A DNA stretch of 64,000 nt from Euprymna scolopes (GCA_053919585.1 CM132790.1); one strand, 5' to 3'. Positions 7,239 through 52,532 are shown, numbered from the stretch's first letter. Numbers and translations: made by a program. Notes: generated from the letters alone by a model not told the origin.

Positions 7239-7826
7239 ACTCGGAGGTGGTCTGCCCCCAGATATGCGGCATGCCAGGCCCATCGTTGTATGGACAAGCC
7301 CTGATGCCCATGAACAGGCCCCCAGCTATGGGTAAATACTACCACTGCCTTGTGGTTATTCGTTGGTTCGATAAAGGCTAAGGGAGTAAATCCTAACAGA
7401 AAATCTGGAGTGTAACCCCACAGGCAGACAAGTGCTGTACTCAGCCTTGCTCTGGTAGCTACTGCAGTCAACCTGGTGCCCGACGTACTGGTACTTCCAT
7501 TCCTCTGGGCAACATCAGCAAGACCGAGAGGGGGATTCTGACGATTGGGCAACCCAGTCTCTCCACAGATCCGCCCTGGCCAGCACCCTGGAGAGAAAAC
7601 TTCAGCTATGCATCTGTATAGGACTAAACAGGGGAGCGACAGTTACCGGTTATAAGCCTACAGCTCAATTGGCGTACAGCTGGGCGCCAGGGGTCGGTCC
7701 TAACGGTGGGAGAAGTTATTTAATTTCATTGGACAGCTACCGCCCGCCACAAAGCTGAGCAGCCCTCAGTCAGTAAGGTGCTATCCCGCCACTGGCCACC
7801 TACCCTACTGGGTGCGTAGGGTATAG

Positions 7827-50321: not shown

Positions 50322-50646
50322 ATTTCCCCAAAACTCTTGCTTTGATAGAGAGGGGACTGAAACTTGCTGCTACCGTTTCAAATGATCTGAAGTTACAGCA
50401 AGTTGAGACTTGATTCTAAATATTTCTCATATGTTATATCTCTCCTCTGTTGAAAATAGGCATGATTATAAAATCTTTAATATCACATAATCCTTATATA
50501 CCGTGAAATTTACATTATAGAAGGGAGATATAACATATGATTATTATTTGGAATCATGACTCACCTTGCTTATATTACTGATCATTTGAAACCATAGCAG
50601 AAAATTTTAGTCTCATCTCCATCAAAGTCAGAGGTTTGGGGTAAAT
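50322..50646. mobile_element. Palindromic MITE-like element (~130-bp arms)
   Basis: atttccccaaaactc..ctttgat..tttcaaatgatc..catatgttatatctc is mirrored at 50515-50646. Confidence 0.75.
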
Positions 50647-50929: not shown

Positions 50930-51430
50930 AATATTTCTTTAATTAATAGACATCTTTTACCTACACACATTAATATTACAATAATTTGCAACAAAACAAA
51001 CTAGGAATTTGTTTAAACAAACAAGGAATTCCAATCATACAAACCATACCAAAACTATAAAAAAAAAGATTAGAAACAGCAAAATATCTTTAGAATAAAC
51101 TAATTCCTAATGCAGACGTATACACTGTTCCTTGTAAAATTGGCATCATATATACGTTAGTAAAACCCAACGTAGATTAGGGGAATGCTCAGTGAACAAA
51201 AAAGACATATAACAAATAGCAATTCTCTAAATGCATTATTCTCTCATTCATTGCAGCATAATCATACTTTTGGTGTCTAAAAAGCAAAAATAGTTAAAAT
51301 TAATTCAAATAAATCACGACAGAGATTTCTTTAATCCGCGCTTATGCAAATTAAAGCACAATTAAACAACGTAGAGATTTCTATAATGTATCGCTATATA
51401 TAAATAAACTACTATTAAAAGATCATAATT
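50930..51430 (+). mobile_element. Penelope-like GIY-YIG remnant
   Basis: DVYTVPCK…IYVSKTQRRLGE.LSE.KR (GIY-YIG type). Confidence 0.6.
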
Positions 51431-51622
51431 TAATCTTAGACAGAGATTAACTCTCTCTCACCATGTAATACACCACATATAATAATTAACTCATATAATC
51501 CGCCAATGAACTACATGACAAAAAAATACACTCATTTATGTTACGCCTCCATATTTAATTATAACAGACATTATTGTTCTAATAAGAATATGAATTGCAT
51601 CACATCTTTTAAATATATTAAC

Positions 51623-51864
51623 ATTCGGGACAAGATCAAAGTGTAGTATCTGTTCCGGCAGATGCTGCAAGCTATGACTAGCTATGACTAGCTATGACTA
51701 GCAAAGACCAGATGTGGGGGCAACCCCACATGCCTGACCTTTAACCAGCTCCCATTTCCCACCTCTCGGGAGCTGGTCCCCTTTTTCCCTTCCCCCTCCC
51801 TTCACTCCTCACATTAAAAATTGGCCTTGTGCCTAATTTGCTCGGTGGGGGAGCAAATAAATAC
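51623..51864 (+). mobile_element. U2 snRNA-headed short retroposon with 20-bp TSD
   Basis: TSD catcttttaaatatattaac at 51603-22 and 51865-84; head aagatcaaagtgtagtatctgttc (U2); GC-rich hairpin body; aaataaata end. Confidence 0.8.
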
Positions 51865-52532
51865 CATCTTTTAAATATATTAACGGCTATATGACGTTAT
51901 AAAAATATATATTACTCTCTTTCACAATGTTATACCTTTTGTGAATTTCCAACGAATTTTTCGTTTCTGAAACAAAAAGATGTCATACATTTCATTACAT
52001 CAAAAATATATTTTCAAATATTCTACTGGTATTTTATTTTCTTAATTTATTTCATCTAGAAGAAGTCTTACAATAAAGATGAACACATACCTTGGTTTGT
52101 TCTTTTTTATCTCTCTATATCCTCGGAATTANNNNNNNNNNNNNNNNNNNNNNNNNNNNNNNNNNNNNNNNNNNNNNNNNNNNNNNNNNNNNNNNNNNNN
52201 NNNNNNNNNNNNNNNNNNNNNNNNNNNNNNNNNNNNNNNNNNNNNNNNNNNNNNNNNNNNNAAGTTTAATATATTTGCATTTCCATAGCGATTTGATTCC
52301 GTACGAGACTGCCAATGGAAGATACATTTCTTATAAAATGTGTGTGTATATTATATATTTATGTGTTAACTGAGTAAATGAGAAATGCAAATATATGAAA
52401 CAATAACAGATATATTTTTGAGGAATTTTAAAATATAACTTCGTGCTGTTAACACTTATTACACTCATAAGTCTAATAGTAATTCGCATATTTATTTTAA
52501 GAGTTTAATCTAGCATTTAAATATTAAAATGT

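What the first reader, a model, noticed from the sequence alone, without database searches (positions are those of the whole stretch)
51603..51884. U2 snRNA-headed short retroposon with a perfect 20-bp TSD: candidate U2-derived SINE or non-autonomous partner of a U2-targeting LINE
Seen: a 242-bp insert between exact 20-bp direct repeats. It starts with ttcgggacaagatcaaaGTGTAGTAtctgttc, the U2 5' region including the branch-point recognition sequence. It then switches to non-U2 sequence with (gctatgacta)x3, three GC-rich hairpins (atgtgggg/ccccacat, accagctccc/gggagctggt, tttgctc/gagcaaa) and an aaataaata end. Known: U2-specific non-LTR elements (Keno, Utopia) insert in this part of U2, and U-snRNA-headed SINEs (SINEU) are described from crocodilians. 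Inference: this is an RNA transcribed from a U2 promoter and retroposed by TPRT. The target start (ATCTTTT) resembles U2 ATCTGTT, hinting at off-target cutting by a U2-specific endonuclease. An invertebrate U2-SINE family of this kind would be new to my knowledge.
Basis: partly seen in the sequence, partly recalled or inferred. Interest (0 to 1): 0.8.

Follow-up and report, generated by a model that had tools for sequence, protein, structure and literature searches.

The report
U2-headed retroposon, off-target solo copy
This 242-base insert is a young copy of a very abundant short retroposon whose front end is a piece of U2 spliceosomal RNA; the family normally lands in that same U2 sequence, and this copy landed by mistake in a look-alike site.

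Summary
Observation confirmed; interpretation largely supported. Window 51623-51864/5 is an insertion. 22 paralogous "empty sites" in the genome carry the duplicated 19-20-mer once.

- **Head:** bases 10-33 equal nt 24-47 of this genome's own U2 (24/24). The rest is not U2-like.
- **Abundance:** the body-specific 33-mer occurs 33,509 times and the tail 19-mer 57,009 times.
- **Target:** 76% of tails are followed exactly by ATCTGTT, which is U2 nt 39 onward, the published Keno/Utopia site. These units stand in head-to-tail arrays inside the U2 heads of other elements.
- **This copy:** its target was T|ATCTTTT, a near match. That motif occurs at 1.6e-4 per position in the window. It is a rare solo, off-target insertion and shows that the head travels with the RNA.
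- **LINEs:** the 764-bp tandem U2 gene array holds 7.1-7.6 kb LINEs with apurinic/apyrimidinic-type endonuclease (APE) and reverse transcriptase (RT). Their nearest reviewed relative is Xenopus Tx1. They carry a U2 nt 1-47 leader and a 3' motif shared with the retroposon tail.

Not shown: the exact partner LINE and how the element is transcribed. The head differs from the genuine U2 5' end, which argues against a present-day U2 gene as source.

This scan had already reported the same system on other windows of this genome. I found no publication of it outside crocodilian SINEU (U1/U2-headed SINEs).

The parts
51604..51622 (+). 5' copy of the target-site duplication (19 bp; 51603 'c' makes it 20 but is probably coincidental)
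   Evidence: Exact repeat. 22 paralogous empty sites carry it once, 21 of them with T at the preceding base.
51623..51631 (+). Diverged remnant of U2 stem-loop I (ATTCGGGAC). This copy lacks about 10-18 nt found in the longest heads of the family.
   Evidence: Real U2 has TTTTGGCT here. Other copies and run contigs extend upstream as ...TTCTTGGC(C).
51632..51655 (+). U2-derived head core: identical to nt 24-47 of this genome's U2, including the branch-point recognition sequence GTAGTA
   Evidence: 24/24 match to the U2 of the 764-bp array. Weak whole-model Rfam U2 hit of 23.4 bits, below the threshold of 46.
51647..51648 (+). Intact landing site GTAGT|ATCTGTTC inside this copy's own head (U2 nt 38|39); still unoccupied here
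   Evidence: In 15 of 16 sampled close copies and in 43,135 genome places a family tail is joined exactly here.
51656..51669 (+). Leader-body junction CGGCAGATGCTGCA; resembles the LINE 5' end just after its U2 leader (CAGTGCT)
   Evidence: Local alignment of the retroposon 5' end to the LINE 5' ends.
51670..51699 (+). (AGCTATGACT)x3 microsatellite-like block, variable between copies (0-3 units)
51700..51806 (+). Subfamily-A-specific body: two GC-rich hairpins (51712-31, 51744-77) and a pyrimidine tract with TTTTT
   Evidence: 33,509 copies of the 33-mer 51700-51732. Not similar to U2 nt 48-192 beyond shuffles.
51807..51865 (+). 3' tail shared with subfamily B and older subfamilies: CTCCTCAC..., core GGCCTTGTGCCTAA (51823-36), hairpin TTTGCTC/GAGCAAA, end TAAATACC
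   Evidence: Shared at 93-100% with B units. The same order of motifs ends the U2-array LINEs. Similarity to the LINE 3' ends is z = 5-5.6 against shuffles. One compensatory change in the mini-hairpin.
51866..51884 (+). 3' copy of the target-site duplication

Best explanation
The insert is one young copy (0.9% from the consensus of 16 close copies) of a non-coding, non-autonomous retroposon family, here called subfamily A.

Structure: a 5' module copied from the first ~47 nt of U2 snRNA, a family-specific body, and a ~60-nt structured 3' tail.

Proposed mechanism: a U2-site-specific LINE of the L1/Tx1 group (APE endonuclease + reverse transcriptase, Keno-like) recognises the tail. It nicks the bottom strand at T|ATCTGTT (U2 nt 38|39) and copies the RNA by target-primed reverse transcription (TPRT).

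Each copy carries that same U2 sequence in its head, so each copy is a new landing site. Elements therefore pile into each other head-to-tail. The 5' junction is made seamless by homology between the incoming head and the resident head.

The window copy is an off-target event. The enzyme cut a look-alike site (T|ATCTTTT) in an older dispersed repeat and the second nick fell 19 bp downstream, giving the duplication. Because there was no resident head, the copy shows the element's own head, slightly 5'-truncated.

Shown: it is an insertion with a duplication; the family size; the identity of the head to U2; the junction statistics; the LINEs in the U2 array with the U2 leader and the shared 3' motif.

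Inferred: which LINE does the work; recognition of the tail; how the 5' end is joined; how the element is transcribed.
For: - Insertion and duplication: exact repeat; 22 empty paralogous sites, control 0; empty-form joint in run contigs.
- Family: >=51 scored matches from 98% down to 70% identity; 33,509 body 33-mers; 57,009 tail 19-mers; summed contig depth in the millions over the element against 0 to a few tens of thousands in the flanks.
- Head: 24/24 identical to this genome's U2.
- Site specificity: 15 of 16 close copies and 43,135 of 57,009 tails (76%) are followed by ATCTGTT. The arrays were read directly. The published 3' flank of Utopia and Keno starts at U2 nt 39 (PMC4640811).
- Off-target look-alike: T|ATCTnTT occurs at 1.6e-4 per position in the window.
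- LINEs: 4 of 4 large gaps examined in the U2 array hold 7.1-7.6 kb elements with U2 nt 1-47 + CAGTGC at the 5' end and ...AAATACC or ...AATAAA at the 3' end. ORF2 = Exo_endo_phos + RVT_1 + zf-RVT. The best reviewed structural match is Xenopus Tx1 P14381, E 4.6e-62. There are 20,690 first-look ORF2 candidates, many with intact frames.
- Tail: the core GGCCTTGTGCCTAATTT is identical to the L051-type LINE (LINE51), and the tail is similar to both LINE 3' ends at z = 5-5.6. The motif order is the same with different stems.
Against: - The exact partner was not found. The two LINE lineages captured share only about 60-70 nt of diverged tail, and their own 3' junctions are at U2 nt 1 and nt 22, not nt 39.
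- Clade assignment of the LINEs rests on a structure search and domain order, not on a tree with Keno references.
- Part of the 43,135 junctions arose by tandem duplication rather than by separate insertions. Three A units and two B units within one array are identical. So the 76% overstates independent site choice.
- Only one off-target site was examined.
- Element-matching contigs in polyA RNA runs do not prove transcription of the element as a unit.
- No promoter was identified.
Confidence: 0.8

Rival explanations
1. One reading: each such RNA is made from a genuine U2 gene promoter. An element sits in a U2 gene, is co-transcribed as U2 5' end + element, and is then retroposed.
For: The LINEs in the array sit directly behind the promoter + U2 nt 1-47, so co-transcription from the U2 promoter is plausible for them. 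It could also have created the head originally. No internal promoter is known for U2 (PMC4494074).
Against: - The family head differs from the genuine U2 in nt 1-23 (ATTCGGGAC and ...CTGTTGTTCTTGGC against ...TTCTCGGCCTTTTGGCT). The masters therefore carry a diverged head.
- Among about 100 consecutive array units listed, the only interruptions are LINE-sized gaps. None is retroposon-sized.
- About 96% of intact U2 nt 26-47 sites lie outside U2-gene-like contexts.
Confidence: 0.12
2. A one-off or recurrent template-switch chimera: the reverse transcriptase jumped from a LINE or retroposon RNA onto U2 snRNA, as in human U6/L1 chimeras. On this reading there is no real family with a U2 head.
For: Template switching onto snRNAs is documented and was proposed for the birth of SINEU heads (PMC4494074).
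Against: - The same junction and the same diverged head are shared by all sampled copies across subfamilies 70-98% identical.
- There are tens of thousands of copies.
- The head ends at the same U2 position (nt 47) as the LINE leader.
Confidence: 0.03
3. Essentially a satellite. Units spread and multiply at the DNA level (unequal crossing-over, segmental duplication), and the window copy is a stray monomer.
For: Identical A and B units within one array. Regular spacings of 194-218 bp and a 281-bp periodic run.
Against: - The window copy is a single unit with a 19-20 bp target duplication and clean empty paralogous sites.
- 5' ends vary between copies.
- Copies are dispersed on all large contigs.
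- The tail is related to LINE 3' ends.

DNA-level amplification adds to retroposition; it does not replace it.
Confidence: 0.05

Closest known systems
SINEU (U1/U2 snRNA-headed SINEs of crocodilians; Kojima 2015, PMC4494074)
   Same: Short non-coding retroposon with a U2-derived 5' head and no recognisable internal promoter. It has internal T-runs that argue against Pol III. It has a target preference shared with Tx1-group LINEs. LINEs in the same genome carry the same snRNA-derived 5' end.
   Different: - No poly(A) tail; it ends in a structured tail ...AAATAAATACC.
- It shares a 3' motif with LINEs, whereas no LINE sharing the SINEU-1 3' end was found.
- Its target is the U2 sequence itself, including its own head, not a Mariner transposon. 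It therefore self-nests into arrays.
- The host is an invertebrate (mollusc by run labels).
- Sequence relatedness to SINEU-1/2/3 could not be tested.
Keno (U2 snRNA gene-specific Tx1-clade LINEs; Kojima and Fujiwara 2004, as cited in PMC4494074 and PMC4640811)
   Same: LINEs with APE endonuclease + RT inserted in U2 genes. The retroposon tails join at U2 nt 39, the reported Keno/Utopia position.
   Different: - Keno is reported from vertebrates, lancelet and hydra, not molluscs.
- The two LINE lineages read here join at U2 nt 1 and nt 22.
- They carry a U2 nt 1-47 leader that travels with them to non-U2 places (120 leader junctions on many contigs).
- No tree with Keno references was possible.
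Utopia (NeSL-group, restriction-like endonuclease, U2-specific; PMC4640811)
   Same: Same target stretch of U2, occasional tandem insertions, and off-target insertions at look-alike sites. 20-bp duplications are reported for the reptile families.
   Different: Utopia has a PD-(D/E)xK endonuclease and a single ORF. The LINEs seen here have an N-terminal APE domain and two ORFs.
R2 and its short internally deleted derivatives (SIDEs); R1/R2 co-transcription with the target (known from the literature; discussed in PMC4494074)
   Same: Site-specific element living in a tandem RNA gene array. Upstream target sequence on the RNA helps a precise 5' junction. Short non-coding derivatives use the LINE's 3' end.
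   Different: R2 removes the upstream rRNA with a ribozyme and stays confined to rDNA. Here the target-derived leader is kept, so the target site is exported across the genome.

Membership tests
SINEU (Kojima 2015) | Short (<500 bp) non-autonomous retroposon present as a multi-copy family | tested here: met
   242 bp, target duplication, empty sites, 33,509 body 33-mers.
SINEU (Kojima 2015) | 5' head derived from U1 or U2 snRNA | tested here: met
   24/24 identity to this genome's U2 nt 24-47. Longer heads span about nt 1-47.
SINEU (Kojima 2015) | 3' poly(A) tail | tested here: not met
   All copies end ...AAATAAATACC directly at the target.
SINEU (Kojima 2015) | Sequence homology to the SINEU-1/2/3 consensus sequences | not testable with these tools
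   No Repbase sequences were available.
Keno (U2-specific Tx1 LINE) - asked of the LINEs L051-L054 | APE-type endonuclease plus RT | tested here: met
   Pfam Exo_endo_phos 4-230, RVT_1 508-759, zf-RVT 977-1032.
Keno (U2-specific Tx1 LINE) - asked of the LINEs L051-L054 | RT falls in the Tx1 clade | tested here: inconclusive
   The best reviewed structural match is Xenopus Tx1 P14381 (E 4.6e-62, 23% identity), ahead of mammalian L1 ORF2 (18-19%). No phylogeny with Keno references.
Keno (U2-specific Tx1 LINE) - asked of the LINEs L051-L054 | Specific insertion in U2 snRNA genes | tested here: met
   All 4 large gaps examined in the 764-bp U2 array hold such a LINE flanked by U2 sequence.
Keno (U2-specific Tx1 LINE) - asked of the LINEs L051-L054 | 3' junction at U2 nt 39 | tested here: not met
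   These LINEs join at U2 nt 1 (L052-54) and nt 22 (L051). The retroposon tails do join at nt 39, which points to a further LINE lineage that was not captured.
Utopia (NeSL group) | Restriction-like (PD-(D/E)xK) endonuclease C-terminal to the RT, single ORF | tested here: not met
   N-terminal APE domain and two ORFs.
Classical Pol III SINE | Head from tRNA, 7SL or 5S RNA with an internal promoter | tested here: not met
   No tRNA, 7SL or 5S hit in the Rfam scans. The head is U2. There is a TTTTT tract inside the body at 51782-51786.
Non-autonomous, internally deleted LINE (SIDE / Bov-A type) | Both the 5' and 3' parts derive from the partner LINE | tested here: inconclusive
   5': same U2 leader end point plus 7 identical bases (CAG, TGCT, one gap). 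3': about 60-70 nt similar at z = 5-5.6. The middle is unrelated.

The most novel reading that the evidence does not exclude
On this reading the U2 head is not a promoter. It is a portable landing pad and a homology handle.

U2-specific Tx1-like LINEs and their short dependants keep nt 1-47 of their target on their own RNA, so every new copy plants a new target. About 96% of intact U2 nt 26-47 sites in this genome now lie in elements, not in U2 genes. That has turned a small gene-bound niche into a self-expanding one that builds arrays and satellite-like blocks.

This would also explain where snRNA heads of SINEU-type elements come from: target read-through or duplication capture rather than template switching.

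If the genome is a decapodiform cephalopod, as its size and its 46 large contigs suggest, it would also mean that the 'near absence of SINEs' reported for that group is an annotation gap.
Probability: 0.45. Interest if true: 0.75.

Novelty: new variant of a known kind. Interest (0 to 1): 0.6.

Why it matters
snRNA-headed SINEs are published from crocodilians only. How they get their heads and how they are transcribed were left open in that paper.

This genome holds the short elements, their landing site and leader-bearing LINEs side by side, young and in large numbers. The origin of the head can therefore be tested directly: target-derived leader against template switch.

It is also a clear case of a site-specific retroelement that escapes the limit of a low-copy target by exporting the target. 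That has consequences for array and satellite formation.

It also bears on repeat annotation. Such elements are missed by head-based SINE classifiers, and published cuttlefish and squid analyses report almost no SINEs.

The window copy contributes the clean boundaries, the size of the target duplication and one off-target site.

Tried and rejected
- An Rfam U2 search of the whole genome failed twice. The vertebrate-type U2 30-mer gave 0 hits. The version with the extra A found the real genes.
- U2 homology beyond the head is rejected. The Rfam hit over the whole insert is 23.4 bits, below the threshold of 46. There is no U2 hit on A, B or C bodies in a larger scan, and the bodies score no better than shuffles against U2 nt 48-192. 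My first impression of Sm-site-like stretches in subfamilies B and C is therefore unsupported.
- No copy of the two LINEs lies in the window or in the 30 retroposon loci.
- The exact partner LINE was not found. I did not try to get them by other routes.
- ORF2 homologues are unnamed. ORF1 has no Pfam match.
- Homologous LINEs from other assemblies: one place gave no DNA but shows tandem ORF1-ORF2 units every ~6.8 kb. Two others (L055, L056) have no U2 motif or shared tail.
- Literature hits for 'SINEU' in an octopus paper were the word SINEUP.
- Rejected readings: DNA transposon or MITE (no terminal inverted repeats, LINE-like tail); tRNA-type SINE; chance repeat.

Full report

Yes. The 20-mer CATCTTTTAAATATATTAAC stands at 51603-51622 and again at 51865-51884, enclosing 242 nt. 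Outside a 35-bp minisatellite and two pairs near 23.2-23.6 kb, it is the only exact direct repeat of 19 nt or more at 100-600 bp spacing in the window.

The decisive test was an empty-site probe: 13 nt of left flank, one copy of the 20-mer and 14 nt of right flank.
- It matches 22 places in the genome at <=3 mismatches; the reversed control gives 0.
- So the flanks belong to an older dispersed repeat whose other copies are uninterrupted and carry the duplicated stretch once.
- Contigs of three public runs also contain an empty-form joint, 51607->51869.

In 21 of the 22 empty sites the base before ATCTTTT is T, not C. The family tail ends ...AAATACC even where the base before the cut is T. The duplication is therefore most likely 19 bp, and the 20th base is probably a coincidence.

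**2. Is it a family?**

- A search of the window's own 5.9-Gb assembly returned copies from 98% down to 70% identity on many contigs.
- A 33-mer specific to this subfamily's body occurs 33,509 times at <=2 mismatches.
- The last 19 nt of the tail occur 57,009 times exactly.
- Laid on public runs, the element has summed contig depths in the millions, against 0 to a few tens of thousands in the flanks. The shared tail is the deepest part.
- Sixteen close copies differ by 3.3% pairwise. The window copy is 0.9% from their consensus. The AGCTATGACT decamer varies from 0 to 3 units.

I call this unit subfamily A. Two other types share its head. Subfamily B has a different body and the same 58-nt tail. 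Subfamily C has a different body and a related tail ending ...AAATAGG. An older subfamily is also present.

**3. Is the head really U2?**

The vertebrate-type U2 30-mer has no match in this genome. The form with one more A does, at >1,400 places. Most lie in a 764-bp tandem array on contig 9, from which I read the full U2.
- Bases 10-33 of the insert equal U2 nt 24-47 at 24 of 24 positions, extra A included.
- The first nine bases (ATTCGGGAC) are a diverged stem-loop I.
- Other copies and run contigs continue upstream as ...CTGTTGTTCTTGGC(C). The full head is thus a diverged copy of about U2 nt 1-47, and the window copy lacks its first 10-18 nt.
- Beyond nt 47 nothing is U2-like. The Rfam whole-model hit is 23.4 bits against a threshold of 46. 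Bodies of A, B and C give no hit in a larger scan and score like shuffles against U2 nt 48-192.

**4. Where does the family land?**

In 15 of the 16 close copies the tail ...AAATACC is followed at once by ATCTGTTC, which is U2 nt 39 onward, belonging to the head of another element. Reading two loci shows arrays of the form head(1-38)-A-B-A-B..., every junction being tail|ATCTGTTC.
- Genome-wide, 43,135 of the 57,009 tails (76%) are followed by exact ATCTGTT. The hits cluster at 194-218 bp spacing.
- This is the position given for Utopia, whose 3' flanking U2 sequence starts at nucleotide 39 and is said to be identical to Keno's (PMC4640811).
- An older subfamily joins at nt 27.
- Caveat: within one array three A units are identical and two B units are identical. 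Arrays also grow by tandem duplication, or from one master, so 76% overstates independent site choice.
- Intact U2 nt 26-47 22-mers number 40,307, against 1,426 U2-gene-like 27-mers. About 96% of the intact landing sites are therefore not in U2 genes.

**5. The window copy**

It is the exception in the sample: solo, in non-U2 DNA, with a long duplication. Its reconstructed target...CATCAT|ATCTTTTAAAT, shares T|ATCTnTT with the U2 site ...GTAGT|ATCTGTTC. That motif occurs at 1.6e-4 per position in this window, so a chance match in register is unlikely.

Since no resident head was there, the copy shows that subfamily A RNA carries its own head. In composite loci the leftmost head can belong to the host element. 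Several subfamily C hosts have only 3-5 bp duplications such as TAC. That suggests a different enzyme or cutting geometry for C.

**6. The LINEs**

The U2 array has gaps of 7.9-8.4 kb. All four that I fetched hold a 7.1-7.6 kb element.
- 5' junction: U2 nt 47|CAGTGC.
- 3' ends: ...AAATACC (one copy ...AAATACA) joined to U2 nt 1 in three copies; ...AATAAA joined to U2 nt 22 in the L051-type copy.
- Two ORFs. ORF2 (1,149 aa) has Exo_endo_phos, RVT_1 and zf-RVT.
- In two copies the 47-nt leader has GGTCAAGATC where the array U2 has GGCTAAGATC. The leader|CAGTGC junction occurs 120 times on many contigs. So the leader travels with the LINE.
- The ORF2 C-terminus has 20,690 first-look candidates. 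All 131 scored were >=94% identical, many with full-length frames and many about 7 kb apart.
- An AlphaFold model (pLDDT 82) is closest among reviewed proteins to the Xenopus Tx1 149-kDa protein (E 4.6e-62, 23% identity). Mammalian L1 ORF2 follows at 18-19%.

The retroposon shares features with these LINEs:
- the end point of the U2 leader and the next bases (CAGATGCT against CAG-TGCT);
- a pyrimidine tract;
- the core GGCCTTGTGCCTAATTT (17/17 with the L051-type LINE);
- the order mini-hairpin, TAA, terminal hairpin, TAAATA.

Similarity to both LINE 3' ends is z = 5-5.6. The terminal stems differ in sequence but are kept. The mini-hairpin shows one compensatory change, GGC/GCC to GAC/GTC, between families. 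The last ~25 nt do not match, and these LINEs do not join at nt 39. The true partner is therefore a lineage I did not capture.

**7. Mechanism**

Shown: insertion with target duplication; family size; a U2-identical head; tail-to-nt 39 junctions; APE+RT LINEs in U2 genes with a U2 leader; a shared 3' motif.

Inferred:
- A Tx1-like LINE recognises the structured tail.
- Its endonuclease nicks T|ATCTGTT.
- Reverse transcription is primed from the nick.
- At U2-type targets, the cDNA end that is complementary to the head anneals to the resident head and gives a seamless junction.
- At the look-alike site the second nick fell 19 bp downstream.

Transcription is open. U2 has no internal promoter, and a TTTTT tract argues against Pol III. 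The diverged head argues against today's array genes as source, and no retroposon-sized interruption is seen in about 100 listed array units.

**8. Comparison with what is known**

- SINEU: U1/U2-headed, crocodilians only, poly(A) tails, no LINE sharing the SINEU-1 3' end, Mariner target, transcription unexplained (PMC4494074).
- Keno is reported from vertebrates, lancelet and hydra.
- Mollusc repeat surveys list Tx1 as common but mention no U2 targeting or snRNA heads.
- Cephalopod papers report almost no SINEs in Decapodiformes.
- Run labels ('mollusc metagenome') place the genome among molluscs. The size and the 46 large contigs suggest a decapodiform cephalopod, but that is a guess.
- This scan's earlier reports on other windows of the same genome describe the same system. 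I re-derived the points used here independently.

**9. Limits**

- All own-genome searches are used.
- Only contigs, not raw reads, were available for the runs.
- There is no Keno reference for a tree.

Noticed in passing
window 22435-22499 (-), 24031-24198 (+), 24415-24545 (-): Three older copies (77-90% identical) of the related U2-headed subfamily C. One begins GGCCTTCGGGCCAAGATCAAAG, a fuller head.
   Followed up: partly
window 24570-25091: A 35-bp-period minisatellite directly beside the subfamily C copy at 24415-24545.
   Followed up: no
window 50323-50448 / 50519-50644: Inverted repeat with 126-nt arms, 79% complementary, 70 nt apart. Possibly a MITE or foldback element.
   Followed up: no
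window 51354-51407 and 51975-52082: The flanks of the insert are themselves moderately repeated (summed contig depth of thousands to tens of thousands). The insert sits in an older dispersed repeat with at least 22 paralogous copies.
   Followed up: partly
G000 contig 9, about 168.87-168.97 Mb (loci L036-L054): Tandem array of U2 snRNA genes with a 764-bp period; the genome holds more than 1,400 U2-like hits in all. About 4 in 100 listed units are interrupted by 7-kb LINEs.
   Followed up: partly
L032 1414-1551 (-): A different short element headed by genuine-looking U2 nt 1-66 (Rfam U2 76.7 bits, above threshold). It is preceded by a related tail, ...GGCCTTGTGCCAAATATTGCCG...CGGCAATTAAATATATACCCC, joined to U2 nt 1 after a short CATCATATAT stretch.
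   Followed up: no
L035 about 1531-1848: The 3' end of an L051-type LINE (81% identical) joined to U2 nt 22-53 at a place that is not a U2 gene.
   Followed up: no
L015 1918-3151: Array in which A-B dimers are repeated with zero differences. This points to very recent tandem duplication or repeated copying from one master.
   Followed up: partly
G000 contig 1, 30311135-30313135: Eight or more subfamily A body hits at an exact 281-bp period: a satellite-like block built from this element.
   Followed up: no
L056 about 790-815 and about 7370-7395 (contig from another public assembly): A LINE whose ORF2 region is 68% identical at DNA level. The same 21-nt stretch CACCTGTGAACTGCGTGTCTT lies before its 5' end and after its 3' end. 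It has no U2, so relatives elsewhere may use another target or leader.
   Followed up: no
ENA sample ERZ21867824, 31.5-kb contig (no DNA served): ORF1-ORF2 pairs of a 62%-identical LINE repeated head-to-tail about every 6.8 kb in another assembly.
   Followed up: no
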